Assembly (NCBI GenBank): GCA_977017575.1
Contig: CDRNVI010000135.1
Coordinates: forward strand, 1-22,321
Reading direction: 5' to 3'
DNA: 22,321 nucleotides
DNA from: Paramoeba atlantica
Taxonomy: Eukaryota > Protista > Discosea
Notes under the pieces: model-generated
Seen by the model: only the letters and a program-made list of their open reading frames with translations
What the model was told of the DNA's origin: nothing
Databases searched by the model: none
Shown here: piece by piece, positions 1 through 21,139 of the stretch
How positions within the stretch are numbered: position 1 is the first letter of the stretch
Layout of the letters: each line of letters begins with the position of its first letter
Translations under genes and position numbers: made by a program

Positions 1-237
1 GTATTAGCGGCACGTGGTGATCTAACCACCGATGCTTATGTCGCACTTACATTGCCCAAGCAAGCATTAGCAAGCGCATTTCGTGGCAGTACACAGGTCG
101 ATAAATATGGATATGAATTAGTTAGCATTGATAAAGATGTGTGCCCACGACAACCGTTAATCGATCATTTTTATCATGATAAGCAACACTATCACTTCGT
201 CAATGACGAATTACAATTGGTCGTGCCTAGTATTTAG
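1..237 (+). CDS. Bacterial hypothetical protein, 3' part only (runs off window start)
   Basis: Frame 1 is open from base 1 (VLAARGDLTTDAYVALTLPKQ...VVPSI) to TAG at 235-237. It overlaps the convergent pyrC stop by 27 bp. No recognisable motif. Confidence 0.6.
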   Translation, partial: VLAARGDLTTDAYVALTLPKQALASAFRGSTQVDKYGYELVSIDKDVCPRQPLIDHFYHDKQHYHFVNDELQLVVPSI

Positions 238-1269
238 GACTTGCCAGTCTAGTGTATCACCCGCACGAAATGGAATAATCGTATCGTTATCATCGGTGAT
301 ATAGGTGGTAGGCACTGTCCACGATTTATGTTCAATACAAATTGAACGCTGATTACATGGCAGTTTATAAAAGTTTGCACCAAGTCGGCTGCAAAAGTCT
401 TCTAATTTGTCTAACGCATTGTGTTTCGCAAAGAATTCTGTGTATAACGCCATTGCCACTGGTGCAGTAAAAATCCCAGCACAACCGCATGCGCTTTCTT
501 TATGTTGTTTAGTATGCGGCGCACTATCTGTTCCTAAAAAGAAATGTGGATCACCACTTAATGCTGCTTGTTGTAAGGCATATTGATGTTGCTGTGCCTT
601 TAAAATGGGTAAGCAATAATAGTGTGGGCGAATGCCACCAACTAACATGTCGTTACGATTTAGCAATAAATGGTGTATGGTAATGGTTGCACCAACTGTT
701 GCTGGGGCTTGTTGAATAAATTGAACCGCATCGCGTGTAGTAATGTGTTCTAACACAACCCGTAGTTTAGGAAACGTATCGACGATGGGTGCTAGTACGC
801 TGTCAATGAATCGTTGTTCGCGATCGAAAATATCGATGTTAGCATCAACCACCTCACCGTGTATTAACAACGGCATATCGATATCTTGCATAGCAGAAAA
901 TAGTGGGTAAAGTTGCTGAACATGCTGCACACCGGCATCCGATAACGTGGTTGCGCCAGCAGGATATAATTTAGCAGCAACGATCTTATCGTGTTGTTGG
1001 GTTTCCATGATGTCAGTTACCGATGTCGTATCAGTTAAATAAAGTGTCATCAATGGGTCAAATGGTGTATTAGCCTGTTTTGCTGCAGCTAGGATACGTT
1101 CTCGATAGGCTAATGCCTGTGCGCAAGTGGTCACTGGTGTCACTAAGTTTGGCATCACAATAACCCGATTAAAATGTTGTGCGCTGGCAGGGACGGTAAT
1201 ATTGAGAAAATGGCCATCGCGCAAATGGCAGTGCCAGTCATCTGGCTGTTGCAATGAAATGGATTGCAT
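211..1269 (-). CDS. pyrC: Dihydroorotase, homodimeric (E. coli PyrC) type
   Basis: Motifs DWHCHLRDG, VMPNL, KLYPAGATT, LIHGEV, LEHITT, HHLL, CLPILK, FLGTDSAPH, CGCAGIF. ATG at 1269 (MQSISL) preferred over 1302 because it matches the usual N-terminus and follows a purine-rich AAAAGGG. Confidence 0.96.
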   Translation of the reverse strand: MQSISLQQPDDWHCHLRDGHFLNITVPASAQHFNRVIVMPNLVTPVTTCAQALAYRERILAAAKQANTPFDPLMTLYLTDTTSVTDIMETQQHDKIVAAKLYPAGATTLSDAGVQHVQQLYPLFSAMQDIDMPLLIHGEVVDANIDIFDREQRFIDSVLAPIVDTFPKLRVVLEHITTRDAVQFIQQAPATVGATITIHHLLLNRNDMLVGGIRPHYYCLPILKAQQHQYALQQAALSGDPHFFLGTDSAPHTKQHKESACGCAGIFTAPVAMALYTEFFAKHNALDKLEDFCSRLGANFYKLPCNQRSICIEHKSWTVPTTYITDDNDTIIPFRAGDTLDWQVLNTRHDQL

Positions 1270-1461
1270 GTGGTTACCCTTTTTGTGGGATAGAACGAAC
1301 AATTAGACTACTGCAGAGTTGGTTGTGGATGCAAGTCGCAATATTAGTCCATAAATCAAGCACATTGGTACCATAATTGCCACCTATGCATTTTGTATTT
1401 AGCTAAACACCGCATCAAAGCTTGCATTTCATTTTCTTTCCGTAGAAGATCGCTCTTCTGG

Positions 1462-1518: not shown

Positions 1519-2487
1519 ATGCAACAACGTAAAATCAGTTGTTTAGTTGCATTATTTATTTCAGTAATAGCAATACTATCATTTGCTACTGCTAGCGGTG
1601 CACCAAATGAGCAAGATAGGGATGCATCGATACAGCGCATTAGCACACAAACAGCAGCATTGGAAAAACAAATGCGCGCTCTACAAGTGCAGTTGCGAGA
1701 ATTAAAACAGCAACAAGCGCAACTAGTTGGGCAACGGACGACAACTAACACATCTACAAAACATACTAAAGCTGTATCGCACCATAGCAAACATCATGGC
1801 AAAGGCTCGGGTGATGTGTTGCGCAGCAATCCAGAAGGTACCTTGGGTTCACAGCTTGATACAGCGAAACAAGTCACACGTTGGATGGATATTCGCGGTA
1901 CAACAGTGGTGACATCGCCTTACTTTGGTCCACAGCCACAATTTGATGGATCGGATATGTTAGTTAATACTTCTAGTGTTAATAAGGATATCGTATTGCT
2001 GCAAATGCGCAAAAATATTAATAAAGAAGTAGATGATGCGCAAAAACCAGCAGAGCATTATTCAGTGTTAGCGCTTAGTGGTGAGTTAGAAGGAGTAGCG
2101 GCATTCTCACGTGGTTATGATAAGACTAAAACCAGTGATGTCGATTTGGCTGCAGCTGAAATAGATGTGGCTGCATTAGTTTATCCATGGTTATTGGGTT
2201 ACATGACGTTGGAATATGACAATAGCAGTTTGCCCGGTGCAACCACCGGTAGCGGTCGACGTGCTGGCAATTCGAATTTTGGTCTAGGCCAAGGCTTTTT
2301 AACAGTGGGTAACTTAGAGCGATCACCCATATATTTCAGTCTTGGGCAACTATATGCACCGTTTGGTCAATACAGCAGTTACATGTATAGCAGTCCGTTA
2401 ACTAAGGTGCTTGGTCGTGCTAAGGTACGTGGTGCTGTGTTAGGTTACGATGGTATTACTAATAACACTGGGTTATATGCATCGGGT
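1519..2487 (+). CDS. Exported outer-membrane protein, LbtU/DUF3573-like porin of Legionellales/Coxiellaceae; 3'-truncated at the junction
   Basis: AGGGGGA RBS; signal peptide (MQQRKISCLVALFISVIAILSFATASG); coiled-coil segment; then beta-strand-like motifs LSGELEG, DVDLAAAEIDV, GFLTVGNLERSPIYFSLGQLYAPFG, SSPLTKVLGR that I recall from LbtU-like porins. The last ~8 codons of the tracked ORF (NITKKYTI*) are antisense nad5. Confidence 0.6.
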
Positions 2488-2492
2488 AATAT
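2485..2492. other. Bacterial / mitochondrial junction
   Basis: The sequence ...TATGCATCGGGT|AATATAACCAAAAAATATAC...: the nad5 frame reads LNSIFFGYI, then becomes non-homologous TRCI*. Base composition drops sharply in GC at this point. Confidence 0.9.
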
Positions 2493-3929
2493 AACCAAAA
2501 AATATACTATTTAAAGCTAATATAAATAAAGGTAAAGACATAAAAATATTAGATTCATGTATTAATTCAAACATTTTTCTATAACCATTAGGTGATGTTA
2601 TAAAAACATATACTAATAACCTAATACTATATAATGATGTAAACAAAGCTGCTATAACACTTAATCAATAAATAAAAGAACTATCTATTATATATGATAT
2701 ATAAGTAATTTCAATTATAACATCTTTAGAATAAAACCCTGTTAAAAAAGGTATACCCATTAATGCTAAAGAACCTATTAACATCATAATATAACTATAA
2801 GGTAATAATTTAATTAACCCTCCATATTTTCTTATATCTTGTTCATCAGATAAAGCATGTATAATAGCCCCCGCACTTAAAAATAATAATGCTTTAAAAA
2901 AGCATGATTAGTTAAATGAAATAAACTTAGTGAATAATTTGATAACCCACATATAAACACCATATAACCTAATTGACTACAAGTTGAATATGCTATAACC
3001 TTTTTTATATCATTTTGAAATAAACCTATAGTTGCTGCAAAAAACTAGTTAAAACACCAACTAAAGTTATAATTCATAAACCAATAGCTGAATATTCAAC
3101 CATTGGTGATAATCTTATTAAAATAAATACTCCAGCTGTAACCATTGTTGCTGCATGTATAAGAGCAGAAACTGGTGTTGGACCAGCCATAGCATCCGGT
3201 AATCAAGTATGTAAACCTAATTGTGCAGATTTTCCCATAGCTCCAATTAATATAAAAATAGTTATCAAAGTTATTGTATTAAAATAATTATTTATAAAAT
3301 AAATATAATCAAATTGACACATATCACTTATTGCGAATATTATACTAAAATTTAATGTTTTATATTCTAAATATATTAAACATATACCTAAACCAACTCC
3401 AATGTCACCTATTCTATTCATAATAATAGCTTTAATTGCAGCTTTGTTTGCATCTGCTATTGTAAATCAAAAATTAATTAATAAATAAGATACTAAACCA
3501 ACACCTTCTCAACCTAAAAATAATTGTAATATATTATCAGCTGTAACTAACATTAACATAAATCATGTAAATAATGATAAATAAGATACAAATCGAGAAG
3601 AAAAAGGATCATTATACATATAACCTATTGAATAAAAATGAACTAATAAAGATATTGTATTTACTACAATTAACATAACACCTGTTACAGGATCGAAAAT
3701 AAATCCTCATGTTACATTAAATAAACCTATATTAAATCATGAAAATAATTTTAAAAAACATACAGAACCTTTTAATACAGTTTCATAAAAAATATAATAT
3801 GATAACAACACTGTTAATAACATATTAAAATTCGCAATTATAAAACTACCTTTATTTCCTAATAAACGCCCAAAAAAACTTATAAATTAAAAAACTTATT
3901 AATGGTAAATATAATACTAATAAATACAT
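2488..3929 (-). CDS. nad5: NADH dehydrogenase subunit 5; 3'-truncated, three single-base frameshifts
   Basis: Motifs [91 protein letters not shown]. Frame breaks at ~3885 (+1), ~3039-3044 (-1) and ~2896-2901 (-1). Confidence 0.95.
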
Positions 3930-3948
3930 AAAAAGTATATAAAAAAAT

Positions 3949-4269
3949 TTAACCTTTTATAGTACTAATATAATCTATAGATATAATACCTCTTAATCTA
4001 TAATAAATAACTATTAATCCTAAACCAATAGCTGATTCAGAAGCTGCTATAGTTAATATATATAAAGCAAATATCTGACCATATATATCATCTAAATATA
4101 TTGATAAAAAAATAAATAATAAATTTACAGATGCTAAAATTAACTCTATAGACATTATTATTATTATTATATTTCTACGTGTAATAAAAATACCCGCTAT
4201 ACCTATAATAAATAAACTAAAACTTAAAATAGGTATAAATGTTTCAAAAGGAATTAAGATATTAAACAT
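3949..4269 (-). CDS. nad4L: NADH dehydrogenase subunit 4L
   Basis: RRNIIIIIMSIELIL, GQIFALYILTIAASESAIGLGL; 106 aa. Confidence 0.95.
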   Translation of the reverse strand: MFNILIPFETFIPILSFSLFIIGIAGIFITRRNIIIIIMSIELILASVNLLFIFLSIYLDDIYGQIFALYILTIAASESAIGLGLIVIYYRLRGIISIDYISTIKG

Positions 4270-4287
4270 TGTTAAAATAAATGTTTT

Positions 4288-5040
4288 TTAATGTCCAGCT
4301 TCGTAAGAATCTTTTAAATAAATAGAAACTAAAACAATAAATACATAAGCTTGTAAAAATGAAATACCAAACTCTAATAAAAAAATTACAGTTATTAATA
4401 ATATTCCTAAAATACCTATAATATAATTAAATTTTAATATTTTTACAATAAAAAATAATAAAATATGTATTAATGAATGTCCCGACATTAAATTTGCAAA
4501 TAACCGTATAGATAAACTAAAACCTCTTGCAATATAAGAAATAACTTCGATACCTATTAACATAGGTAATAAAATATTAGGAACACCTTTTGGTATAAAT
4601 AACTGTATAAAATGTAATTTTTGTTTTAAAAAACCTATTATAGTTAATCCTATAACAGTAATTGATCCTAATAAAAATGTTAAAATTATATGACTTGTAA
4701 TAGTAAAAGAACTTGGTACTAAACCAATAAAATTTGCTATTAATATAAAATAAAATAAGCTAGCTATATAAACAAAATATGGTTCACCTCTTTTACCTAC
4801 TTGTGTAACTAAAACATTTAACGGAAATAAATATATAAAATTCTCATATATGTATTGTCATAACGATTTATAAACTAAATTTAATTTAGATAATAATACA
4901 TTACTTGTTATAATATTTATTATAAAAAAAATAATAAATAAATATATAAATAAGTTTGTTATATAAAAATCACTAAAATAAAAATTTATATATAAAGAAA
5001 ATATATCAAATTGATCTAATGGTTGAAAAAATTTATTCAT
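4288..5040 (-). CDS. atp6: ATP synthase subunit a
   Basis: Continuous in code 4 through TGA at 4858-4860. Starts with PLDQF; contains FTITSH, IEVISYIARGFSLSIRLFANLMSGH, LEFGISFLQAYVF; 250 aa. Confidence 0.96.
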
Positions 5041-5058
5041 AATATATAAAATAATTTT

Positions 5059-5415
5059 TTACTCTCAGGTTAAAGCACCTTTTAATCATTCATATATGAA
5101 ACCTATAGTTAATATAGTAATAAAAATCAATACTACTAAAAAACCACTTGTTCCTAAAAAATTAACTAAAGTCAATCATGGAAATAAAAATATTATTTCT
5201 AAATCAAAAATTAAAAATAAAATAGATACTAAATAAAATCTTACATTAAAATTATGTCTAGTATCTTCAAAAGGGTGAAAACCACATTCATATGCTGAAA
5301 CTTTTTCTATCTCAAATTTTGAATAAATAAGAAGTAAAATAATAGAAAATAATACTAAAGAAATAATCATACTTAATGATATAGAGATAATAATTATACT
5401 ATATTCAAAATTCAT
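5059..5415 (-). CDS. nad3: NADH dehydrogenase subunit 3
   Basis: [35 protein letters not shown], ends GFIYEWLKGALTWE*; 118 aa in code 4. Confidence 0.96.
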
Positions 5416-5418
5416 ATA

Positions 5419-5922
5419 TTATTTTTTTATAGTAAAATATTTTTTAAAAATAAAATTTTTATAGTTTATTTGATTTAATAATTTAAATTTAATACTAAAT
5501 ATAAAATAATTATTAATATAAAAAGTATTTAAAAAATTATTATATAAATAACTATATAAATTTGATATAGAATTTAATAATATATTTAAATTAATATTAT
5601 AAAATAAAATTATAAATTTAAAATAATAATTTTGAAATGTAGATATTAAAATATTTTGAAATATTATATTTTTATATAAATAAAAAATATAATATAGTTT
5701 TAATAATTTTAAATAATATTGTTTATATATTTCATTTTTTTTTATAATTAAGAAATTACTTTTTAACGAAGAAATATAAAAAGTAAATAAAGATATAATT
5801 AATAATATAATTATAATTAATAAATTACCAACAGAATTAAAAAAAAATAAATGATTTGAAAACATATTAACTAAAAATAATATAGAAATATAAAAAATTA
5901 TAAAATTAAAAATTTTATTCAT
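5419..5922 (-). CDS. Probable ATP synthase subunit b (atp4/ymf39-like), divergent
   Basis: 167-aa ORF with two N-terminal hydrophobic segments and a polar helical remainder. Size and topology fit atp4, but no firm motif is present. Confidence 0.45.
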   Translation of the reverse strand: MNKIFNFIIFYISILFLVNMFSNHLFFFNSVGNLLIIIILLIISLFTFYISSLKSNFLIIKKNEIYKQYYLKLLKLYYIFYLYKNIIFQNILISTFQNYYFKFIILFYNINLNILLNSISNLYSYLYNNFLNTFYINNYFIFSIKFKLLNQINYKNFIFKKYFTIKK

Positions 5923-5926
5923 ATGT

Positions 5927-7075
5927 TTAAGTAATATTTTTATATAATGATTTTTCTAATTTAACAATAACAGGTAACAATATAATAAAATATATAAAAT
6001 AAAAACTTGTAGCCATTTGACCTATAAAATAATAAGGTTCTTCTATAGGTTTACCTCCTATTCAGGTTAATGTAATAAAATCCATAATAAATAATCAAAA
6101 ACCTAAATTATAAATAGGTCTAAAATAACCACTAACTATAGGTGCTTTCACATAAAATGGAAATATTATTAAAACAATAATAGATAAAACTAATAAGATA
6201 AAACCACCTGCTTTATCTGGTACAGATCTTAAAATTGCATAAAAAGCTTTAAAATATCATTCTGGTACGATATGTACGGGTGTTACTAAAGGATTTGCTT
6301 CTAAATAATTATCTGCGTCTATTATACTTGGAGTATGTTTTATAGCATACATATTAAAACCAAATAATAATAATAATGAACTAAATAAATCTTTAAAAAC
6401 AAAATAAGGATGAAATGGTATTTGATCTACCTTATGATTAATACCTAATATATTATTAGAACCAACTTCATGTAATAATATAATATGAACTCCAGCTAAA
6501 GCTGCTATAACAAAAGGTAATAAATAATGTAAACTAAAAAAACGATGTAATGTAGCTTCATCAACAGAAAATCCACCTCATAATCATAATAATATATCAT
6601 TACCTACAAAAGGTATAACTGACACTAAATTAGTAATAACAGTTGCTGCTCAAAAACTCATTTGACCCCAAGGTAAAACATAACCTACAAAAGCTGTTAT
6701 AATCATAATTAATAATATTATAACACCAGATACTCATACAAATTGTCTAGGATAAGTATATGAACCATAATATAAACCTCTAAATACATGTAAATATATT
6801 ACAAAAAAAAAAACTGATGATCCACTAGCATGGTACATTCTTAGCATATCACCAAAATGTACATCATTAACTATATGTCTAACACTAGCAAAAGCTAAAT
6901 CAGCATTAGGTGTATAATACATAGCTAAAATAACACCTGTTAAAATCTGAATAATTAAAAACAAACCAGCACTAACTCCTAAATTTCAAGCATAAGTTAT
7001 ATTAGCAGGAGCTGGATAAACTACTAAAGCATTATAAAATGCATTTACAAAAATATCTTTTTTAACTAATCTCAT
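5927..7075 (-). CDS. cob: Apocytochrome b
   Basis: Continuous 382-aa frame in code 4. All four heme-ligand His present ([27 protein letters not shown]); [12 protein letters not shown]; WGGFSVD; HIVPEWY. Confidence 0.98.
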
Positions 7076-7455
7076 TATTTATATATTGTTTTTATTATAA
7101 AATATTTTTTATTTAATAAAGATTCTTTTTTTAAGAAATTTAAACCTAATATATATAATTTACTAAAAATAATAATTTTAATATTATTAATTTTAGATTT
7201 TAATAAAACAACAAATTTATTTAATAAAAAATTATTATTTAATAAAATACTTAAATTTAATTTTATAATAAATAAAATATTTGATTCTAATAATAATAAT
7301 CTTTTTATTATAGATTTTAATTTATATTTTCTTAATTTAATAGTTTTATTTATTAAAGGGAATATATATCTTGCATAATAAATATAAATTAATCAAAAAA
7401 ATATAAAATTTAAAACTAATTCTAAAAATAAAATTCCTAAATCTAATTGTGGCAT
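7075..7455 (-). CDS. atp8: ATP synthase subunit 8 (long protist form), absent from ORF track
   Basis: Starts MPQLD; one TM helix with in-frame TGA (FFWLIYIYY); then FPLINKTIKLRKYK; 126 aa. Its TAA overlaps the cob ATG (TAATG). Confidence 0.88.
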
Positions 7456-7693
7456 AATAATAATTTTTTTTTTTATTACTATAATTTAATTACTAAATAA
7501 TTTTCTTAATCATTTTTTCACGTTTATTCTTTTCTTTCTTTTTCTATACAACATCTTGAAGGTGCAAACATATATAAGATAAAAATATTTTTTTCTTTTT
7601 ACCTTATTTTAAAAATATTATTATTATTCAAATTAATAATAATATTCAAATTTAAAAATTTCTTTTTAAATTTATTAATTAAATATTATTTAA

Positions 7694-10600
7694 TTAATAT
7701 TTTTTAGAATTTAATAAAGTAACAGTATTTAATTTATAATTTATTAAGCTATTATTATTTAATAAACTATAATCATAGTCATAAATATTATTAAAAAAAT
7801 TTATTTCATTTAATTTTGAATAATAATTTAAATTTTTTTTATTTGAATACTTAATACTATATATATACTTATATATTATATTTAAATTTTTCATAAATTT
7901 AGTAATAAATAAACTAATATCACAATTTATTTTTTTAGTATAATTATTTTTTAAAATCAAATTATTAAATAATACTAATTTTAAAAAATATTTATAATAA
8001 CTATATATAGAATTATTATATTTCAAATTATTTATATTTTTATAATTATTAGTATAATCATTAATATTATTAAATAATATATAATTTTTTATTGATACAT
8101 TTTTTACTAAAAATTTATTATAGTAAACTTTATTTTTAATAAAACTTTTGAAAGTCTTATTTTTGTTATAAAAATATTGTAACAAATTACTTCTAATATT
8201 AATTAAAATTTTTGAATAATTTAGTTTACTAAAATTTTTATATTGATTAATTCGTTTTAAAAATAATAAATCAATATTATATATTTTTCTATATATATTA
8301 TAAATTTTAAAATGTATATATTTTGATAAATACGACATTATATTATCTTCATTACGTTTAAAATAATTTTCTTTTATTAATGATCATTTAGGATATTCTA
8401 CTAATAATGTTCTTCTAAAAAAATACATACTACTTTTTTTAAATAAACCTTTTTTAAATAAAATTTTTAATTTTTTTTTCATTTGTTTAAATAATAATGT
8501 TTTATTATTATTAATAAACTTATAATTTAAAAAAAAAGATGTAATATTATTATACCTATAGAATCTTCTCTTTTTTCCTGTTAAATATAAATTTAATAAT
8601 TTTTTTTCTCTTTTCTTTAAATTATTTTTTTGAATTAATATAAATACTTTCTTCTTTCTATTATAAAATTTTAAATATGAACTCTTCTGAGTAAAAGATT
8701 TATTTATAAATCAATTTCTTTTTTTTCATAAACAAATTGAGTTTTTAATATTTTTTTTTTCTTTTATTGGTTTTAAAATTATTTTTCTCTTTTCTTTTAT
8801 TAAATTATTATTTATAAATAAATAATAAGTTCAAGATTTTAAATTTTTCTCTTTTCTTTTATTTAATTTTAAATTATCAATTAAATTACAATTATAAGAT
8901 ATAAAATTTCTCTTTTTTAAACTTTTATTCTCTTTTCTTTTAGATATAATTGAATTATTATTTAATAAATTTTTTGAATAAAAAATATAATTCTTTTTAA
9001 TCTTAGTTAAAACTTTTATTAAATAATTTTCACAATTAATATTACAAGAAAATACTAAAAAATTATTATAAGGTATCTTTATAGATTTTCATTTATAATA
9101 TAAATCATTCTTTTCTTTTTCATTTATAATATAAAAATTTCATTTTTTTTTATGAAATTTATTTATTATATCGTAATAATCTAATTCATAACTATTAAAT
9201 ATAAAATTTTTATATTTATAAACTTTAAAATTTTTATATTTATGAGAACAATAATCTTTATTAAATTTATTATATTTACAATTATAATTATAAATATTAA
9301 AATTCAATAAATCTTTATTATTATAATTGTAAATATAATAATTTATTAAAGATTTCATATTTTTATTATTATTAAAATAATTTTTTTTCTTTATTCCCTT
9401 TTTTTTATGTAATTTATTTAATTTAATTAAATTTAAAGAAATATTATAAAAAAATTTATCAAATTTATATATTTTTTTTTCTTTTGTTGTTGATTTTTTA
9501 ATAATAAAAAATTTTGAATTTTTTCTTTTTATATTTATAAATTTTTTAATTTTTTTCTTTTTATATTTATAATTATTAATTTTATTATAATTATATTTAT
9601 TAAAAATACGAAAATATAAATATTTATTTATTTGTTTTCAATTTCTTTTTTTTAATATGTTATTAAAACTATTCTTAAAAAAGAAATTTTTAACATTTTT
9701 AGAAATTTTATAATTATTTAATAATTTAATATTATTTAATATTATTAAAAATATTTTTAATATTTTATAATCAATATTCGAATTAATAGTATATAAAAAT
9801 TTATTCATTATATAAAATTTTTTATAATTTTTATATAAAAATTTATTTTTAATATTATTATAAATACTATTAATATATAAATTTTTTATAAAATATAAAA
9901 AATTATAATTTAATAATTTTTTTCTTTTAATTAAATATGAATAATTATATAATTTTATTCTTTTTTCTTTTCTTTTATATAATTTTAAAGAATAAAAGTT
10001 ATTTTTTATTCTTTTTATATAATCTAAAAATTTCTCTTTTCTTTTATATTTTTTTCATAAATTAATATTATATATTTTATAAAAAAAATTATATCTAATA
10101 TTAAATAAATTTCTCTTTTCTTTTTTATTTTTAAATAAATTTAGTTTATTTAAAAATAAATTATAATTATATAATTTATTTTTAAATTTTTTTTTAATTA
10201 AAATTTTTCTCTTTCTATATAATTTATTTTTATTTTTTTTATACAATAATTTTTTAAATAAAAAATAATAATTATTATAAAAATTTTTTATATTAAATTT
10301 TTTATATTTTAAATATTTTTTATTATAATATTTTAATAAATTTTCTTTTCTAAATAATAAAAATAAATTTTTTTTATTCTTTTCAAGACAATATTTTTTT
10401 CTTATATAAAAATTATTATTAAATTTTATATAATCTAAATTAAATAAATTTAATTTTGATAAAGACTTAAAATTATAACCTAAAAATACTTGACCTTTTT
10501 TTAAAAAAATAGTTTTTTTTATTATATTATTATTATAATGAAATAATTGTTGTTTTCTTCTTCTCTTTTCTTCTCTTTTCTTTCTAAAACTATTACTTAT

Positions 10601-11172
10601 AGTTTGAAAATATAAACCATTTTCTGGTCCAAAATTTAAAAAATCTTCATTATCTATATTATTAAAACGAGTTTGCTTTAAAAACAATTTTTTTCTTAAT
10701 TTATTTTTATATGATAATAAAAAATTATAATTTTTATACCTTAACTTTCTATTATATATAAATTTTTTATTACAATCTAAAAAATTCATAAAAGAATTTT
10801 GAAAAAAATTATTATAAAAATTTTTATAATTATCTTTTATAACAAAAAACGATTTAGAATTATTTAAATTCAATAATAAATATTTATTATTTAAATACTC
10901 TAATTTATAAAATTTTTTATTAATATTAAATTTAAAAAATTTATTCATTAAATAATAAATATTTATTATTAAATTAAGATTGAAATTTTTTATTTCTGAA
11001 TAAATATTATCACTAATAACATCAATAACATTATTTAATAATAAAAAATTTTTACTCTTATAATTTAAATTATATAAAGATAACTCATTATAATCTGTTT
11101 TATTATCAAATAAAACTATTTTATTATTTTTTTATTATGTTTTATTATATTATTATATCATGTAGTTTTCAT
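7694..11172 (-). CDS. Giant Lys/Asn/Tyr-rich ORF of unknown function (>=1084 aa; about 1160 aa if one A is restored near 11130)
   Basis: Track ORFs 10055..10948, 9140..9358 and 7694..8338 share one frame and are joined by eight TGA codons, with no TAA/TAG from 11131 to 7697. Probable ATG at 11172, 3 nt after the rps13 stop, needs A7->A8 at ~11127-11133; first in-frame ATG is 10948. Confidence 0.85.
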
Positions 11173-11175
11173 CAC

Positions 11176-11490
11176 TTATATTATTTTTTTTCTCGATGAT
11201 CTATTATTAGTCTTTGATCGTTGATTATACATAGGTAACCCTCTAATACGTTTATAACCAAAATAAGAACCATTAACTATTTTTTTCATAATATTATTAT
11301 ATCTAATATGTTTAATTTGTTCCTTCCTTTTAAAAAAATATAACAAATTTTTTTCTAACTGTTTTAATAAACCTTTATTATTAATATTTTTATAAGATTT
11401 ATTATATAATAAACCAAATTTAAATAATATTATAGATAATAAAGATAAACCAATATTATAATTATTAATTATATAACGTTTTATATTCAT
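11176..11490 (-). CDS. rps13: Ribosomal protein S13
   Basis: C-terminal GSYFGYKRIRGLPMYNQRSKTN matches the uS13 GLPVRGQRTKTN motif; syntenic after rpl6. Confidence 0.88.
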   Translation of the reverse strand: MNIKRYIINNYNIGLSLLSIILFKFGLLYNKSYKNINNKGLLKQLEKNLLYFFKRKEQIKHIRYNNIMKKIVNGSYFGYKRIRGLPMYNQRSKTNNRSSRKKII

Positions 11491-11495
11491 ATTTT

Positions 11496-11684
11496 TTATT
11501 GTTTATTTATAATACCCATTTCATATAAATAATTTTTAACTTGAAGTCAATTATTATCGAAAATTAATTTTAAATTATAATTATGTATATAAATTAAATT
11601 ATAATTATAATTTAATAATACCTTAAAACTTATTGCTGAATTAATAAGTTCCTTTTTTTCAATTTTTTTTAATATATAATTCAT
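11496..11684 (-). CDS. Small unassigned ORF (62 aa) between rpl6 and rps13
   Basis: Code-4 frame MNYILKKIEKKELINSAISFKVLLNYNYNLIYIHNY...EMGIINKQ*. It fills an otherwise 150-nt gap and overlaps the rpl6 3' end. Confidence 0.4.
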
Positions 11685-12180
11685 TTTTTTCTTTTATTCC
11701 TTTCAATTTATATGCATTTAATTTTCTAAATTGTTTTATTTCCACAGATACTTTTTTTAACAAAAAATAAGAATTACTAAATAAAAAAAGATTTCTTCTA
11801 GATCTAGATTTAACTAAAATACCTTTAGGTATATTATAATAAATCAAATGATTATAACCTATATTAAATCTTAATTCATTATCTTTTCAAATAGTCATAG
11901 TAAAACCTAAACCTATAACATTTAAAATTAGGCAATAACCTCTTATCAAATCAATTAAATTTTTTTTTATATATCTTTGAAATAAACTATAATATTTCTT
12001 TCTTTTAATAATTAATGTTTTATTATTTAATATAAATATATTTTTTTGATTAAATAAAGTTAAGATAGTTAAATCTATATTTTTTTTATAATTACTTATT
12101 ATATTTTCCATAAAAATATTATTATTATTATGTATAATATTTAATAAAGAACTTTTTCCTAAATATAATTTTTTTTTCAT
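11641..12180 (-). CDS. rpl6: Ribosomal protein L6
   Basis: Two track ORFs join through TGA. LNVIGLGF, FNIGYNH, FRKLNAYKLKGI; 179 aa; follows rps8. Confidence 0.9.
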
Positions 12181-12183
12181 TTA

Positions 12184-12576
12184 TTATAATATATTTTTAT
12201 ATAATAGATGTACTTTTAATAAGGCTTTACCACCACTTTTTATAATATAAGCTTCATCGTGTGTTAACAAACCTTTATTACTACTATAAAAACAAGGATT
12301 AAAATAAAATTTAGAAAAATTTTTATTAAAAGTTTTAAATTTTAAATATTGTTTATTACCTCCTGAAGATAATTGTTCTAAAAAAATTAAAGGCTTATTA
12401 TTATAATATTTTAATGTTATTTTTATTTGGTATTTATTACATATTATAAAACTATTTATCAAATTTAATTCGTATAAACGTGATAATATAGGTAAATACT
12501 TTTTTTTTAATGGTATATATAAACTTTTTAAATTAGCTATATACCCATTATTAATTTGACTACAAAAAAAATTCAT
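12184..12576 (-). CDS. rps8: Ribosomal protein S8
   Basis: IKITLKY, SSNKGLLTHDEA...GGKAL; position between rps14 and rpl6. Confidence 0.9.
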   Translation of the reverse strand: MNFFCSQINNGYIANLKSLYIPLKKKYLPILSRLYELNLINSFIICNKYQIKITLKYYNNKPLIFLEQLSSGGNKQYLKFKTFNKNFSKFYFNPCFYSSNKGLLTHDEAYIIKSGGKALLKVHLLYKNIL

Positions 12577-12579
12577 AAC

Positions 12580-12849
12580 TTATCAAGATATTTTTTTTAA
12601 ACCATTAATTTGTTTCATATTAAGAGATTCTTTTATATTCATTCTAGATAAAGAAAAATCTCGAAAAACAGATCTCTTTAAACCAGTTTCTATACAAAAA
12701 TTCTTTCTTAAAATATTCTGTATAGGAAAATTCAAAAAAAATATTTTCTTTTTCCTATATATTTTTAAAATTTTTAATAATAATACTAATGTATTATTAT
12801 TATTATATATTCTTTCATTTTTATAATTTTTTAAAAAATATTTTTTCAT
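12580..12849 (-). CDS. rps14: Ribosomal protein S14
   Basis: RKNFCIETGLKRSVFRDFSLSRMNIKE...GLKKISW*; the canonical terminal Trp is encoded by TGA and followed by TAA. Confidence 0.92.
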
Positions 12850-13378
12850 GTAATTTATTATTATTATTATTAAAATTTATAATAAAATTTAATTTAAAAA
12901 TTAAATTATTTACCAATATATCTTCATCACTATTTAATCCTAATAAAAAATTAAAATTTTTTAATTCTATTATATATTTATTTTCTTTTCTATAAATTAA
13001 ACTACTTTCATTATTTTTATCTAATAAATTAAAAATAATATTATATAAATAATTTAAATTAGAATAAATATTATTTTTTCTTAAACTTAATCCTAAAACT
13101 ATATAATAAGATAAATTATTACGTCTTGATCTAACAGAAAAATTACGTAATGTCTCTTTTTGTATTTTTATAATAGAAACTCTTTGATTAAATAATTTTT
13201 TAAATAATTTATTTAAAATAAGATACCTTCTAACTATATTACCATCTGAAGAATATAATTTAACTTTTACATCAACTTTATCAATTTTTGATAATTGATT
13301 AAAACTCATTATATTCAATTTACTAATGTTATCCTTTTGTATTATATTTAAATTACTTTTGAAATCTATACTTTTCAT
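12821..13378 (-). CDS. rpl5: Ribosomal protein L5
   Basis: KIDKVDVKV, LFNQRVSII, NFSVR, LGLSLRKNNIY; syntenic between rpl14 and rps14. Confidence 0.8.
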   Translation of the reverse strand: MKSIDFKSNLNIIQKDNISKLNIMSFNQLSKIDKVDVKVKLYSSDGNIVRRYLILNKLFKKLFNQRVSIIKIQKETLRNFSVRSRRNNLSYYIVLGLSLRKNNIYSNLNYLYNIIFNLLDKNNESSLIYRKENKYIIELKNFNFLLGLNSDEDILVNNLIFKLNFIINFNNNNNKLHEKIFFKKL

Positions 13379-13382
13379 ATTT

Positions 13383-13739
13383 TTATATTATACTTTGCAT
13401 CAATAAGAAAACTTTACGGTTTATAAATCTTAAAAATTTTAAACTAATACCAAATAATTTTGTACCTAAAGGTAATTTTTTTTTATTTATCAAAACAACA
13501 GCATTATCACTAAATTTATAATAATTTATATTTTTTTTTAAATTATATTTAGTTCTAATAATTAAAGCCTTATATAATTCTCCTTTTTTTATTCTTTTTT
13601 TAGGATTATTTGTTTTAACAGTTATTAATATTTCATCACCAATAGATCCATATTTTTTTCTTTTATAAATTCTTATACATTTTACAATACGTGCACCAGA
13701 ATTATCACTACAATTTAAATAACTACCTACTAAAATCAT
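13383..13739 (-). CDS. rpl14: Ribosomal protein L14
   Basis: MILVGSYLNCSDNSGARIVKCI, FSDNAVVLIN, PLGTKLFG. Confidence 0.96.
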   Translation of the reverse strand: MILVGSYLNCSDNSGARIVKCIRIYKRKKYGSIGDEILITVKTNNPKKRIKKGELYKALIIRTKYNLKKNINYYKFSDNAVVLINKKKLPLGTKLFGISLKFLRFINRKVFLLMQSII

Positions 13740-14179
13740 TTTTCTTTATTATAAACTAATTTAAATTTAATATTTGATTTTAATGAGGCTAATTTAACAA
13801 TTCCTTTAATATATTCTAATAATTTTTTTTTATCATTATCATTTAATATAAATAATTTATTAGAAAAACCAAATTCAATAAATATTTGACCTTTTGATAT
13901 ATTAAAATAATATTCATTTAATGCACCCTTACCTTTACCCATTCTAACACCTATAGGTTTTGATGTATTTTTAAAACTTGGATGAAAACGTATAAATAAT
14001 TTAGTAAAAAATTTTAATCTTTTTTTTAAAAAAAATAATAAAGCCTTAAATTCATTATTATATAGTATACCACCTTCTAAAAAATATATAGCAAATTGAC
14101 CATTATATATTTTTTCTATCGAATTTTTAGTATTAGAATAATTTAATATTAAATGTTTTTTGACAAAAATTTTTTTCAT
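13730..14179 (-). CDS. rpl16: Ribosomal protein L16
   Basis: TSKPIGVRMGKGKGA, GQIFIEF. In code 4 it reads through TGA at 13736-13738 to TAG at 13730. Confidence 0.95.
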
Positions 14180-14227
14180 TTCTATTTATTTCTTAATAAA
14201 TCAACTTTTTTTCTCTTTTCTTTCTTT

Positions 14228-15418
14228 TTATATTATAGAAGATAAATACACTTTTCTAACATAACTCATTTTTACACCACAAACACCATACCGCATAATT
14301 AAAATAAACTGATTATAACTTAAAGGAGAATTTATATTACTTGGTGAAATAGCACCAAATTGTTTAATAAACTTTTTATTTCTTAACTTTTTTTTATATC
14401 TCCCTGCATAACCTATTTTAAAACCTATAATACCTCTTTCATTTTTTAATTTATTATGTAATAAATAAGCATAATGCTCTATTTTATAACCTACACGCAA
14501 TCTTCATAAAATTAGCTTATATAAAGAATAAGTAGAATAATTTACTTCTTTTTTATCTATAAAATTAATTATAGGATTATTAACTTTAAAAATTTTTTTT
14601 ATAAAAAACGATAAAAAATTTTTTAATATAAAAATAAATTTTTTATCTAAAGTTAAATAATTAGTATTTTTAATATATTTTAATCTATTTAATCAACGAT
14701 TAGTTGGAATTCTTAATAAATTAAATCATTTATATTTAAAAATAAAATTGTTTAATCTTTTATTATTTTTATAAATATAAATATTTTTATATTTATAAAA
14801 ATATTTAAAATTATTAAAATTATTTATTGATTTTTTTTTTCATATATTTTTAAATATTTTCTTTCTATAAAACCCTCTACAAGACTTATTATAAAATAAA
14901 TAATATTTATTATTATGCATGTCTCAAAAAAAATAATTAAATCAAACATATTTTTTATTTTTATAAAAATTTTTTCTTTTACTATAAAAAAATTTACGTA
15001 AAAAATTTAATATATATTTTTTTTTTTTTTTTTCTTTTAAAAAATTATATTTTTTTTTTCTTTTTGACTGTTTATACTTTAAAAAAGATTTAAATATATA
15101 TTTTTTTGACTGATTATAATATTTTTTTAATTTATATTTTTTTGACTTAATATCATTAATTAAAAATTTATTATCATCATTTAATAAATTTAAATTTATT
15201 ATCATCATTTTATATGTTTTAATTATATTTAACGGTAATATTTCTAAATTTAACTTGTTTCAATTAATTATAACTTTAATTCAATTATAAAATTTAATAA
15301 TATTATAATCTTCTAAAAAAAATAATTTATAATTTTTTTTTGTAATATTATTTCAAGACGAAATTCAATATTTACTTTTTGATAATCTATATGTTATTGG
15401 ATTAACTAAATGTCCCAT
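14228..15418 (-). CDS. rps3: Ribosomal protein S3 (396 aa, Lys-rich internal expansion)
   Basis: Continuous in code 4 from MGHLVNPITYRLSKSKYWISSW to GFKIGYAGR...YGVCGVKM. Confidence 0.93.
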
Positions 15419-15420
15419 AA

Positions 15421-15699
15421 TTATTTTTTCTTTTTCTTTATACGTTTCTTTTTCTTTTTATCTTTTATTAATATATTTTTTGAAAAAAAAAAATAATTAA
15501 TCATATAATTAACCATACTATCTATAATTTTAATTGGAATAAAATAACGACCATTATATACAGTTAATCTTTTATTAATCATATAATTTTTTATTTTAAA
15601 ACCTTTTACTTTTAACTTTAATCAAATAAATTTATCTATTTTTGAAAAATTTAAAAAATAAATAATATTTTTAATATTTTTAATATTATTTAAATTCAT
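15421..15699 (-). CDS. rps19: Ribosomal protein S19, absent from ORF track
   Basis: RLTVYNGRYFIPIKIIDSMVNYMINYF aligns with uS19 VHNGR..VPV..T.EMVGHKLGEF; 92 aa; between rpl2 and rps3. Confidence 0.88.
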
Positions 15700-16429
15700 T
15701 TTTTTTTTTTTTCTTAGTTGTAGGTACAAATTTTAATACACGTCTTGTAAAATTTGGACAATCGACTCATGGAGAAGTTTTACCTCTACCACCACCATTA
15801 GGGTGATCTACACAATTTTTTGCTACACCTCTAACTGTTGATTTTTTACCTAATCTTATATTAACACCCGCTTTACCTTTTTTTATTAAATTATGCCCTC
15901 TATTTGATACAATACCTATCATAGCTTTATTATATTTAAAAATTAATTTTTCTAAACCAGAAGGAAATCTTATTAAATAATAATTTTCATTTATTTGTGA
16001 TATTAATAAACAAAAAGAACCTGCAGATCTAGCTACTTTACTTCCTTTTTTTTTTTTTAATTCCATACAAGATATAAAAGAACCAAATTTTATATTTACT
16101 AAAGGATATGTAGAACCAACAATTTTATCTACTGAATTTAAAACCATACCTTCTTTCAAACCTTCGGCTGCTAAAATATAAGATAAAAATCCATTTTTAT
16201 AACATATTAAAGCTATATTTGCAGATCTATTAGGATCATACTCAATTCTTAATACCATTGCAGGTATATCAACGTAAGTTCTAAAAAAATCAATTAATCT
16301 ATATTTCTTTTTAACTCTAGTTCCCTTTGATTTAACTGTTTTATGACCCATATTATTAACTCCTGCATAATTTTTTAAACCAAATGTTAAATATTTTATT
16401 GTTTTTGACTGTTTTTTCCTTTTTAACAT
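15686..16429 (-). CDS. rpl2: Ribosomal protein L2
   Basis: IEYDPNRSANIALI, KVARSAGS, VRGVAKNCVDHPNGGGRGKT; extends through TGA to TAA at 15686. Confidence 0.95.
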
Positions 16430-16432
16430 ATA

Positions 16433-16852
16433 TTATTTTTTTCTTTTAAATCTAATATTAGTATAATTTGCTTCTATTAATCTATACATATCATTTTTTT
16501 TTTTTATAGATAAACCTTTATTATTATATACATCTATTAATTCATTTTGAATACGTTCTTGAAATTTTCGCTCAGTTCTAGAATTAATAGATCTAACTAT
16601 TAATTTAACAGAATATGGTATAGAATCTTTTGATTTTAAAATATGTGGTATTAATAATTTTTTACCTCCTACTTTTTTAATATAACAAAACATTCTAATG
16701 AATATATTAGTTTCTATTTGTTTAAAAAAAGTATTTAAACAACCATATATTTTTTTTATATTAATAAAAATTTTCTCTAAACTTAATATAATTCGTTGTT
16801 TTTTTCCTTTTCTTATTAATAATTGTATTAAATATTTTATTCAATTATTCAT
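16433..16852 (-). CDS. rps7: Ribosomal protein S7
   Basis: MNNWIKYLIQLLIRKGKK, SIKKKNDMYRLIEAN; follows rps12. Confidence 0.85.
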
Positions 16853-17255
16853 CTTTTAAAATCTTTCCTTCCTTCTTTTTTTTTTTCAAACCATATTTAG
16901 AACGACTTTTATTTCGTTCTTCACGTTCTCAATTACTAAAATCATATTTTCCTTTTATCAATTTATAACGTACACCTGGAATATCTCTAGCACGTCCTCC
17001 TCTAATCATAACAACTGAATATTTTTGTAAATTATGACCTTGACCTGGTATAACTGCTATTAATTTTTTACCTGTTGATAACCTTATTTTTGCTACTTTT
17101 CTTTTAGCGGAATTTGGTTTCTTTGGACTAACACTATTTCTAATTTCAATACAAACACCTCTTTTTTGTGGACAAGAATCTAACAAAAGAACTTTTGTAC
17201 GTCTTTTTTTTTTTACTCTGCCTTTATTTCTTATTAATTGATTTAACGAAGCCAT
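16845..17255 (-). CDS. rps12: Ribosomal protein S12
   Basis: [53 protein letters not shown] (after TGA read-through). Confidence 0.97.
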
Positions 17256-17624
17256 AATTTATATTTAAATATTATTAACGTATTAATAATTTTTTTTTCA
17301 TAATTGAATTTCATTAATTCATTAAATAAATAATACTTTTTATTTAAATTTAATAACAAACTATTATTTATTTGTTCTAAAGTTCCTTTACTATATAATT
17401 TATTTTTATATCATAAAAAATAATAATTCATCATTATTTAAAAGATTAGTAAAATAATCTTTAAAATATTTCTTATTAATAATTAGAAAATATTTAATAT
17501 TAACAAAAATTTTATATAATAAATTAATATTAGATAAATTCATTATGTTTAAATAAATTTGTTCAAAATTATTAAACGATTTATATTGATTTACATAAAA
17601 AAAAGCTATAATATTATTATTCAT
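17243..17624 (-). CDS. Unassigned ORF, possible rpl10, with a probable +1 frameshift at ~17415-17420
   Basis: The 72-aa track ORF joins a second open frame ([18 protein letters not shown]...KLWLR*) if one T is removed from a T6 run. It occupies the ancestral rpl10 slot between rpl11 and rps12. Confidence 0.4.
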
Positions 17625-17630
17625 ATTTTT

Positions 17631-18086
17631 TTATATAATTTTATTAATTTGTAAATTTGATATAGAAAAAAAACTATTTTTAAATCGCAATTTTATTCAA
17701 TTTTGATTTAAATTATTATATAATTTAAATCAATAATAATTACGCAATATAACAATATCATATAGACTTCTTAATGTAATTGAATTTTCCATAATATTTT
17801 TATTAGTTAAACTCATAATATTTCAAACCAATTTTAATAAAGTACTAAAAGAAGGTCCTTTTATTAAAAAAACAAATGATTTATCAGTATATAAAAATAA
17901 TCTAACATATATTAATAAATCTTCCGATCTATATATAAAAGTTTGTTTATTAAATTCATTACAAAATTCTTTGATTTTCTCTCTATTCATATAAGGACTT
18001 AAATTAGGTCCTATATTTAAATTTTCAAAAGCGGCACCTCTAGAATTAATTCTTAAATTAAAAAATCGATTTAATTTTTTTTGCAT
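17631..18086 (-). CDS. rpl11: Ribosomal protein L11
   Basis: IGPNLSP, IKEFCNEFNKQT, YTDKSFVFLIKGPSFS; 151 aa in code 4. Confidence 0.9.
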
Positions 18087-18119
18087 ATATATAATATTTA
18101 ATATTATATTAATATTTGA

Positions 18120-19304
18120 TTAACGATCAACCTCCCCAAAAACTATATCTAAAGTACCTATAATAGTAACAACGTCGGCTATCATATGTCCTTTTGATAA
18201 TGTATCTAATAATTGTAAATGATTAAACCCTGGTGCTTTTATCTTACATCTTACCGGTCTATTTAATCCTCCCGAAACTAAAAAAACACCAAATTCCCCT
18301 TTAGGAGCTTCTATAGATCTATAAACATCATTAAAAGGTATATTAACACCTTCTGTAAATAATTTAAAATGATGTATTAAAGATTCCATAGAAAACTTCA
18401 TTAATGATCTTGAAGGTATAGTTAATTTATTATTGTAATTTGAAATAGGACCTTCTTTTAAATTATTTAAAAGTTGTAAAATTATTTTTAAACTCTCATG
18501 CATTTCTTTTAATCTAATTAAAAATCTATCAAAACAATCACCTTTATTTCCTATATAAGATTTAAAATCAACTTCATTATATAATTCATAAGGTTCACTT
18601 TTTCTAATATCTCAAGGAATACCAGATCCTCTTAAAATAACTCCACTACAACCTCAAGTTTGTGCTTGATTATAATCTAATATACCTACATCAACTAAAC
18701 GTTGCTTTCATATTCTATTTCTATTTAATAATTCTTCCATTTCCATTAAAGAGTTAATAAAATTTTGTGTAAATTTATATAAATCATCACAAAAAGACAT
18801 AGGTATATCTTGACTAATACCTCCTGGTCTTATATATGCTGCATGCATTCTAGCACCTGATACCCTTTCGTAAAATTCCATTAATTTTTCACGTTCTTCA
18901 AAAAGTCATAAAAAAGGTGTCATCGCTCCAACATCTAACGCATGTGTAGTTAACCCTAAAATATGATTTAATATTCTAGTTATTTCACCAAAAATCATAC
19001 GTATCATCTTTGCTCTTATAGGTACATTAGTAGAACTTAAAGTTTCTACAGCTAATGAATAACAATGTTCTTGAGCCATCATAGATACATAATCTAATCT
19101 ATCAAAATAAGGTAAAGCTTGTATAAAAGTCTTATATTCTATTAATTTTTCAGTACCTCTATGTAATAATCCTATATGAGGATCAGCTCTTTCTATAATT
19201 TCACCATTTAATTCTAATATTAATCTTAAAACTCCATGAGCTGCTGGATGCTGTGGTCCAAAATTAATTGTAAAAGTTTTTATTTTTTTAAATATTTTAT
19301 TCAC
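18120..19304 (-). CDS. nad7: NADH dehydrogenase subunit 7
   Basis: [62 protein letters not shown]; continuous in code 4; apparent GTG start. Confidence 0.98.
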
Positions 19305-19308
19305 GTTT

Positions 19309-19899
19309 TTAAAGTATATATTTTTTATTTAATAAAGGATTAGTAAAACTATATGATCTCATATTTTGCATTAATTCAATAGGCTCATAAATCAAATATT
19401 GTTTATCTTCATCATACCTTATTTCTAAATAACCATTTAAAGGAAAATCTTTACGAAACGGATAACCTTCAAAACCATAATCGGTTAATATACGTCTTAA
19501 ATCTTTATGACCCATGAAAAAAATACCATACATATCTCAAACTTCACGTTCTAACCAATCGGCACCTAAATAAATATCAGTAATAGATCTTATAACATCT
19601 AATTTATCACAAGATACAGAAATAATTAATCTAGAATTATAATCTATACTTAATAAATTATAATCAATTTCAAAACGTTTAGCTCTATCAATAAAATCAC
19701 TACAGCAAATATCAGTTATTACCTTATATCTTAAAAAAGTATGCTTATTAAAAATATTTAAAACAAAACCTAAATAATCTTTTGATACTAATTTAATTTT
19801 AATAAATTCATCTGTTATTTTTATATGCGAAATATATTTAATTAGTAAATTTAATATATAATTTACAGCATAATTATTACTATTTTTTTTTAATAACAT
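19309..19899 (-). CDS. nad9: NADH dehydrogenase subunit 9
   Basis: [36 protein letters not shown]; two track ORFs joined by TGA=Trp. Confidence 0.97.
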
Positions 19900-19911
19900 A
19901 TTTTTTTTTAT

Positions 19912-20235
19912 TTATAATATATATAATTTATATTTTTTAATATTACTAATTTTATATTTTAAAAATAGATTAAAAGGTGAAGTAACAAAATATAATTGAT
20001 TTAATCGTATATTTTTATACCTATAATATAATAAAAAACTTTCCATATTTAAATATTGTTTTTTATTAAAATTTATAATTAATCCTTTAATATTACGTAT
20101 ATATACATTCTTATATAATCAATAAAAATACTTTAATTCAATAGATATATTATTATTTAATTTTTTTTTATATTCTATAGATAATAAACTTAAAAAAGAA
20201 TTATCTAAATAATTTATAATTTTTTTCTTTTTCAT
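19912..20235 (-). CDS. Unassigned basic ORF (107 aa), absent from ORF track
   Basis: The ATG lies 3 nt after the rps11 stop; open in code 4 (one TGA) to TAA at 19912, 12 nt before nad9. Confidence 0.6.
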
Positions 20236-20238
20236 TTA

Positions 20239-20911: not shown

Positions 20912-20938
20912 ATATAATTAAATTTAATATAAGTTTTA

Positions 20939-21011
20939 TGTGGAGAATTGGGTTTGAACCAATGACCTAAAGCTTTTCAGGCTTTCGCTCTACCTACTGA
21001 GCTACCCCCAA
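20939..21011 (-). tRNA. trnF: tRNA-Phe(GAA)
   Basis: D-arm GCTCAGTAGGTAGAGC; anticodon arm AAAGC-CTGAAAA-GCTTT; T-arm ATTGG-TTCAAAC-CCAAT; 73 nt; U1xC72 mismatch. Confidence 0.95.
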
Positions 21012-21133: not shown

Positions 21134-21139
21134 TAAAAT

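What the first reader, a model, noticed from the sequence alone, without database searches (positions are those of the whole stretch)
2461..2520. Seamless join of a Legionellales-like bacterial gene to a protist mitochondrial nad5
Seen: both genes are cut mid-CDS at ~2487-2490. There is no linker, target-site duplication, tRNA or mobile element, and base composition and genetic code switch abruptly. Inference: the likeliest cause is a chimeric read (ligation or MDA) or a misassembly of co-sampled genomes. A real insertion of ~20 kb of host mtDNA into a bacterial chromosome would be remarkable, but it would break an outer-membrane gene and the UGA=Trp genes would be untranslatable in the bacterial code.
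Basis: partly seen in the sequence, partly recalled or inferred. Interest (0 to 1): 0.75.

Follow-up and report, generated by a model that had tools for sequence, protein, structure and literature searches.

The report
Chimeric contig: cobiont bacterium joined to mitochondrion
The join between a bacterial gene and a mitochondrial gene is real in this contig, but it is almost certainly an artefact of sequencing or assembly, because both genes occur intact elsewhere and the same assembly holds several similar false joins.

Summary
The window is a whole 22.3-kb contig (C135) of a 45.7-Mb protist assembly.

- **Bacterial side:** bases 1-2485 match, with no difference, a separately assembled 2.45-Mb bacterial chromosome (OZ220716.1). 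It carries Dot/Icm genes, as Legionellales do. There the LbtU-family porin gene runs on intact to 540 aa.
- **Mitochondrial side:** bases 2487-22321 are the host's mitochondrial DNA. Seven other contigs I aligned carry nad5 straight through the break; where I translated it, it is an intact 613-aa gene.
- **The join:** base 2486 fits neither parent. There is no shared sequence, repeat, tRNA or mobile element at the join.
- **Sequence quality:** C135 has three private 1-base errors in runs of A. All lie within 1.4 kb of the join.
- **Other false joins:** four more contigs end in a foreign piece. These are C116 (mtDNA with another bacterial locus), C89 (bacterium with nuclear DNA), C129 and C202 (mtDNA with nuclear repeats).

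The scan has a second note on this same window, s1-403743. Interest is low.

The parts
1..237 (+). 3' end of the bacterial icmQ gene (Dot/Icm type IVB secretion), cut by the contig end
   Evidence: In the intact bacterial locus L026 the IcmQ gene (Pfam Dot_icm_IcmQ) ends 237 bases into the stretch that equals window 1-2485.
211..1302 (-). Bacterial pyrC (dihydroorotase), complete
   Evidence: TIGR00856 pyrC_dimer, 429.8 bits against a cut-off of 293, model positions 2-340 of 341. It is the only such gene in the assembly.
1519..2485 (+). 5' part (codons 1-322 of 540) of a bacterial LbtU-family siderophore porin gene
   Evidence: NF033652, 116 bits, model positions 3-129 of 327. The intact gene in OZ220716.1 scores 290.9 bits over positions 3-306. 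Identity to OZ220716.1 is 100% up to base 2485.
2486..2486 (.). The join: one base (G) that matches neither parent
   Evidence: Three-way comparison of the window, the bacterial chromosome and a mitochondrial contig. There is no microhomology and no repeat.
2487..3929 (-). 5' part (residues 1-481 of 613) of mitochondrial nad5, with three private 1-base indels in runs of A (about 2896-2902, 3039-3045 and 3884-3886)
   Evidence: Pfam Proton_antipo_M and NADH5_C. The gene is an intact 613-aa frame on C134. The indels are absent from all seven other contigs compared.
3930..22321 (-). Rest of the host mitochondrial DNA: nad4L, cob, a 1145-aa ORF, a ribosomal-protein cluster, nad7, nad9, tRNA-Phe, tRNA-Ser and the 3' two thirds of the small-subunit rRNA. 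It is read with TGA = Trp and is collinear with other mitochondrial contigs.
   Evidence: Code-4 ORFs, Pfam, tRNAs, Rfam SSU rRNA, collinearity with C128, C112, C121, C115, C126 and C120.

Best explanation
C135 is an artefact. During long-read library preparation, a fragment of the cobiont bacterium's chromosome and a fragment of the host's mitochondrial DNA were joined end to end in vitro. This most likely happened by ligation of two inserts, or possibly by template switching if the DNA was amplified. The hybrid molecule was read as one long read. Its bacterial tail could not be merged with true mitochondrial reads, so the assembler kept it as the tip of a small, read-sized contig. Decontamination presumably removed pure bacterial contigs but kept this one because about 89% of it is mitochondrial. 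Shown: both parents are intact elsewhere, the join is blunt, the private errors cluster next to it, and joins of this kind recur in the assembly. Inferred: the ligation step, single-read support and the filtering history.
For: - **Bacterial parent intact.** Window 1-2485 equals OZ220716.1 (2,447,832 bp) with 0 differences, and there the porin runs on to 540 aa. A second, independent low-coverage assembly (ERZ26167977, 12.5-kb contig) is also continuous across the break.
- **Mitochondrial parent intact.** Seven other contigs carry the same continuation for the 60 bases printed past the break; their 200-base upstream stretches fall into two versions. On C134 nad5 is an intact 613-aa frame.
- **No mtDNA in the finished bacterial chromosome.** A search with window 2487-5400 gave only 68-72% matches at one locus, which I take to be the bacterium's own nuoL homologue.
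- **The chimeric product is unique.** The 331-aa chimeric ORF product is on record in no other assembly.
- **Blunt join.** One odd base, no microhomology, repeat, tRNA or mobile element. An overlap-based misjoin is therefore unlikely.
- **Errors cluster at the join.** C135's only private errors in about 6.8 kb compared are three A-run indels within 1.4 kb of the join. None occurs in the next 51 runs of 6 or more bases (hypergeometric p = 0.0017). This fits thin read support next to the join.
- **The contig is read-sized.** It is one of at least 20 mitochondrial contigs of 13-42 kb.
- **Recurrence with unrelated partners, each foreign piece lying at or reaching a contig end.** C116: mtDNA up to window-equivalent 2780, then one odd base, then 1.9 kb of the bacterium at 0.53 Mb. 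C89: 12.1 kb of the bacterium at about 1.0 Mb, then nuclear DNA. C129: mtDNA, then a 4.5-kb tandem repeat. C202: mtDNA, then a nuclear repeat.
- **Literature.** Ligation-based long-read libraries are known to yield chimeric reads that can mimic DNA integration (PMC8495745).
Against: - No reads were examined. The number of independent molecules spanning 2486 is therefore unknown.
- A blunt join with one filler base is also what non-homologous end joining makes in vivo.
- Two bacterium-mtDNA joins lie only 294 bases apart in nad5 (window 2487 and 2780). I found C116 because it matched near my query start, and other breakpoints lie at 3438 and 6307. This is most likely ascertainment, but a fragile site in the mtDNA is not excluded.
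Confidence: 0.9

Rival explanations
1. Purely computational misjoin: no hybrid molecule existed, and the assembler linked a bacterial read to a mitochondrial read.
For: The assembly handles the mitochondrial genome poorly, leaving at least 20 redundant small contigs. It also holds several odd contig tips.
Against: The two parents share no sequence at the join. One base fits neither parent, and the flanks are unrelated. An overlap or k-mer graph has nothing to join them through. The same holds for C116.
Confidence: 0.04
2. Real but rare biological hybrid. In a minority of cells, mtDNA and symbiont DNA were joined in vivo by end joining. This could be mtDNA captured in a symbiont chromosome, symbiont DNA captured in a mitochondrial molecule, or both captured together at a nuclear break.
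For: The bacterium and the host mtDNA occur together in all five runs found, from two studies and under two organism labels. The bacterium has a Dot/Icm system typical of intracellular Legionellales, so the two DNAs may share a cell. Blunt joins with a filler base fit end joining.
Against: - Both parents are 100% identical to the free copies, so there is no sign of age.
- The finished bacterial chromosome and seven mitochondrial contigs lack the join.
- Only one junction is present, with no far side.
- The join lies 2.5 kb from a contig end.
- The two bacterial pieces joined to nad5 (C135 and C116) come from loci about 270 kb apart and point in directions that cannot form one insert.
- Similar joins involve nuclear repeats. 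That fits random pairing of abundant molecules.
Confidence: 0.05

Closest known systems
Chimeric reads of ligation-based long-read libraries (PacBio, ONT ligation kits)
   Same: Two unrelated parent sequences are joined bluntly in one read-sized piece. Both parents are intact elsewhere. Partners are the abundant DNA species of the sample. PMC8495745 reports such reads and warns that they can mimic DNA integration.
   Different: Here the chimera survived into a deposited assembly as a contig. I could not see the read itself.
Cobiont or contaminant sequence left in eukaryote assemblies
   Same: A bacterial cobiont was sequenced with its host and assembled separately as its own chromosome (OZ220716.1). 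Remnants stay in the host assembly.
   Different: The remnants are not whole bacterial contigs. They are bacterial tails on host contigs. I suggest, without having tested it, that contig-level composition or taxonomy filters would miss them.
Genuine organelle or symbiont DNA transfers (NUMTs, Wolbachia-to-host insertions)
   Same: A blunt, end-joining-like junction between DNA of different compartments.
   Different: Real transfers show both junctions, host flanks, read support at host depth and usually some divergence. None of these is seen here.
Multiple-displacement-amplification chimeras
   Same: Artefactual joins in long reads from low-input protist samples. The literature search listed papers on this.
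   Different: From my own knowledge, MDA chimeras are mostly inverted joins within one molecule and use short microhomology. Here the partners are different genomes and there is no microhomology. I do not know whether this library was amplified.

Membership tests
In-vitro chimeric molecule or read artefact | Each parent sequence exists intact, without the join, in the same or a sister data set | tested here: met
   The porin is intact in OZ220716.1 and in ERZ26167977. nad5 is continuous across the break on seven other contigs and an intact 613-aa frame on C134.
In-vitro chimeric molecule or read artefact | Blunt junction with no homology, no mobile-element ends and no repeat | tested here: met
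   One base fits neither parent, and there is no microhomology, repeat or tRNA.
In-vitro chimeric molecule or read artefact | Recurrence with unrelated partners and breakpoints, weighted to abundant molecules | tested here: met
   C116, C89, C129 and C202 each carry a different foreign end piece.
In-vitro chimeric molecule or read artefact | Junction supported by one molecule only | not testable with these tools
The only indirect hint is that three private homopolymer errors cluster within 1.4 kb of the join.
Genuine DNA integration (lateral transfer or NUMT-like) | The recipient locus is interrupted in the recipient's assembled genome, and both junctions are present | tested here: not met
   The bacterial chromosome is uninterrupted at the site and holds no mtDNA from the part tested. 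The mitochondrial contigs are uninterrupted. C135 shows only one junction.
Genuine DNA integration (lateral transfer or NUMT-like) | Many independent spanning reads at the depth of the recipient genome | not testable with these tools
   No reads could be laid.
LbtU-family siderophore porin (NF033652) | Score above the curated cut-off of 90 bits | tested here: met
   116.1 bits for the truncated copy in the window and 290.9 bits for the intact gene.
Mitochondrial NADH dehydrogenase subunit 5 (nad5) | Proton_antipo_M core plus the NADH5_C tail, with TGA read as Trp | tested here: met
   Two pieces match Proton_antipo_M at 57.4 and 38.3 bits, above the cut-off of 21.5. NADH5_C scores 25.3 bits on a 59-aa piece, just under its cut-off of 28.2. 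The intact gene has 11 in-frame TGA codons.
Legionellales-type bacterium (Dot/Icm type IVB secretion) | Dot/Icm genes in the genome | tested here: met
   DotD, IcmT, IcmS and IcmQ (precomputed Pfam hits) lie directly upstream of pyrC in the intact locus. Order-level placement by phylogeny was not done. The public record calls it only 'Gammaproteobacteria bacterium'.

The most novel reading that the evidence does not exclude
The hybrid molecules are real. In this host, a Dot/Icm-bearing intracellular bacterium and the mitochondria exchange or co-ligate DNA fragments in vivo at low frequency. In that case C135 and C116, both breaking nad5 within 294 bases, would record a fragile site in the mtDNA joined to symbiont DNA.
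Probability: 0.04. Interest if true: 0.8.

Novelty: not a real feature. Interest (0 to 1): 0.07.

Why it matters
As biology it does not matter, because no gene transfer is shown. It matters for data hygiene in three ways.
- The deposited host assembly still carries pieces of its cobiont bacterium as tails on host contigs (C135, C116, C89). It also carries at least 20 redundant mitochondrial contigs.
- I expect automated screens for lateral gene transfer to flag these joins as bacterium-to-organelle or bacterium-to-nucleus transfers.
- The frameshifted, truncated nad5 in this contig should not be read as a pseudogene.

One useful by-product: the bacterium is a Dot/Icm-bearing cobiont that accompanies this host in all five runs found.

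Tried and rejected
**Reads.** The look-up of sequencing runs found five runs holding 84-98% of the sampled words of window 1-5000. No read-level evidence exists. Scripts masked those places or worked on 2487-5400 and 5500-9400, and searches used 2487-5400 or non-mitochondrial pieces.

**One large insert.** I considered that C116 and C135 are the two ends of one bacterial insertion in nad5 with a 294-base duplication. I rejected this. The bacterial pieces come from 0.53 Mb and 0.26 Mb of the chromosome, with orientations that cannot form one continuous segment.

**nad5 as a decaying pseudogene.** Rejected. The only differences from the other copies are three A-run indels. There are no substitutions in about 6.8 kb.

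**Structure at the join.** A repeat and hairpin search found only short matches that I take for chance.

**Naming the host.** Paper searches found other protist-cobiont genome notes but not this one. Tetramitus jugosus, at 26.3 Mb, does not fit the 45.7-Mb assembly.

**Other.** Pfam gave nothing above its cut-off for the porin. The first Pfam call failed on an in-frame TGA.

Full report
**What the window is.** The window is the whole of contig C135 (22,321 bases) of a 45.7-Mb assembly in 248 contigs. The size, the RNA-polymerase genes and the mitochondrial contigs mark the assembly as a protist. G+C is 0.42-0.45 over the first 2.5 kb, then falls to 0.23 and as low as 0.07-0.26 for the rest.

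**Left side: bacterial.**
- It holds a complete pyrC (TIGR00856, 429.8 bits).
- It holds the first 322 codons of an LbtU-family siderophore porin (NF033652, 116 bits, model positions 3-129 of 327).
- A scan of bacterial genomes found the same porin at 100% identity in OZ220716.1, a 2,447,832-base chromosome filed as 'MAG: Gammaproteobacteria bacterium'.
- Window 1-2485 equals that chromosome with no mismatch and no gap.
- There the porin continues to 540 residues and matches the LbtU model over positions 3-306 at 290.9 bits.
- An exact-protein look-up found the intact 540-aa porin in two ENA assemblies: the 2.45-Mb contig and an independent 12.5-kb contig of about 1.7x depth. Both are continuous across the break.
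- In both, DotD, IcmT, IcmS and IcmQ lie just upstream. This supports 'Legionellales-like'. Window 1-237 is the tail of icmQ.
- The chimeric 331-aa product is on record nowhere else.

**Right side: mitochondrial.**
- Read with TGA as Trp, it gives nad5, nad4L, cob, a 1145-aa ORF, a ribosomal-protein cluster, nad7 and nad9.
- It also holds tRNA-Phe, tRNA-Ser and part of the small-subunit rRNA.
- The same DNA lies on at least 20 other contigs of 13-42 kb and is collinear with the window over its whole length.
- Homology to seven of these contigs starts at window 2487. All seven continue leftward with the same 60 bases printed.
- On C134 nad5 is an intact 613-aa frame with 11 TGA codons. The window keeps residues 1-481.

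**The join.**
- Base 2486 is G, where both parents have T.
- There is no microhomology, no repeat or hairpin, no tRNA and no mobile-element end.
- Only one junction is on the contig, so a target-site duplication cannot be judged.

**Sequence quality near the join.** I compared C135 with seven other mitochondrial contigs over about 6.8 kb, leaving out places 5429-5464.
- C135 has three private differences. All are 1-base indels in runs of A, and all lie within 1.4 kb of the join, inside nad5.
- It has none in the next 5.4 kb, which hold 51 runs of six or more bases. The hypergeometric p is 0.0017.
- There are no substitutions.
- This fits thin read support beside the join. It does not fit an old, decaying insert.
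- The bacterial part has no long homopolymers, so its perfect match says little about support.

**Other joins of the same kind in this assembly.**

| Contig | Length | What is joined |
|---|---|---|
| C116 | 18.8 kb | mtDNA up to window-equivalent 2780, one base fitting neither parent, then 1.9 kb identical to the bacterial chromosome at 0.53 Mb |
| C89 | 157 kb | 12.1 kb identical to the bacterium at about 1.0 Mb (including rpoB), then nuclear DNA with repeats |
| C129 | 15.1 kb | mtDNA up to window 6307, then a 4.5-kb tandem repeat |
| C202 | 27.7 kb | mtDNA, then a nuclear repeat found at many contig ends |

- Each foreign piece lies at, or reaches, a contig end.
- The partners are molecules that I take to be abundant in the sample.
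- The bacterial pieces on C135 and C116 come from loci about 270 kb apart and point in directions that cannot form one insert.
- The finished bacterial chromosome holds no mtDNA from window 2487-5400. The only hits are 68-72% matches that I take to be its own nuoL homologue.

**Reading.** The simplest account is that hybrid molecules formed in vitro, were read as single long reads and were kept at contig tips.
- Ligation-based long-read libraries are known to produce such reads, and they can mimic DNA integration (PMC8495745).
- A purely computational misjoin is unlikely, because nothing is shared at the join.
- A real but rare in-vivo join cannot be excluded without reads. Nothing in the assemblies asks for it.
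- A single odd base occurs at two joins. It could come from ligation of two A-tailed inserts. That is my speculation from general knowledge of library preparation, and I did not test it.

**Limits.**
I worked beside those places afterwards.
- Five runs from two studies and under two organism labels hold both halves of window 1-5000. The bacterium and host therefore travel together, which explains why their DNA meets in one library.
- The host could not be named.

**Verdict.** This is not a real feature, and interest is low.

Noticed in passing
G000:C116:16909-18812 (L049:7909-9812): A second mitochondrion-bacterium chimera. nad5 is cut at window-equivalent 2780, one odd base (T) follows, then 1.9 kb 100% identical to the cobiont chromosome at 528,376-530,274.
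   Followed up: yes
G000:C89:1-12111 (L020, L016): The first 12.1 kb of a 157-kb nuclear contig are 100% identical to the cobiont chromosome (about 995,336-1,007,445, including rpoB). Nuclear DNA with a dispersed repeat follows. This looks like another chimeric tip and would pass for a lateral transfer.
   Followed up: partly
G000:C129:13375-15131 (L051:176-1932) and G000:C202:1-1402 (L052): Two more small contigs join mtDNA to something else. C129 joins it to a 4538-base tandem repeat that fills C203 and C233. C202 joins it to a repeat found at the starts of many small contigs.
   Followed up: partly
G000 contigs C95, C108, C112-C116, C118, C120, C121, C124, C126-C135, C227, C229, C232: The mitochondrial genome is present at least 20 times as redundant contigs of 13-42 kb. 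They differ from each other mostly by scattered 1-base homopolymer indels, so per-contig frameshifts in mitochondrial genes are not biology.
   Followed up: partly
L049:8507-8635 (= G000:C116:17507-17635) and about 50 places in G001:C1: A roughly 128-base element is dispersed about 50 times, on both strands, through the cobiont chromosome at 73-94% identity. It looks like a REP- or MITE-like repeat family.
   Followed up: no
window 7697-11131 (-): A 1145-aa open frame appears in the mitochondrial DNA only when TGA is read as Trp. It lies in DNA of about 7-11% G+C, and I did not look for a function. Another note of the scan (s1-403684) covers it.
   Followed up: no
window 1-5000: Five public runs from two studies, filed under two organism labels, each hold 84-98% of the sampled words. 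All of them therefore contain both the bacterium and this mtDNA, which suggests a stable host-cobiont association.
   Followed up: partly
L027 (ERZ26167977 ctg7367, 12,488 bp): In the second, low-coverage bacterial assembly, several genes around the porin (icmQ, pyrC, a peptidase, purL) are split into two or three called pieces. I take these for consensus errors at about 1.7x depth, not pseudogenes. The stretch matching window 1-2485 has three gaps.
   Followed up: partly
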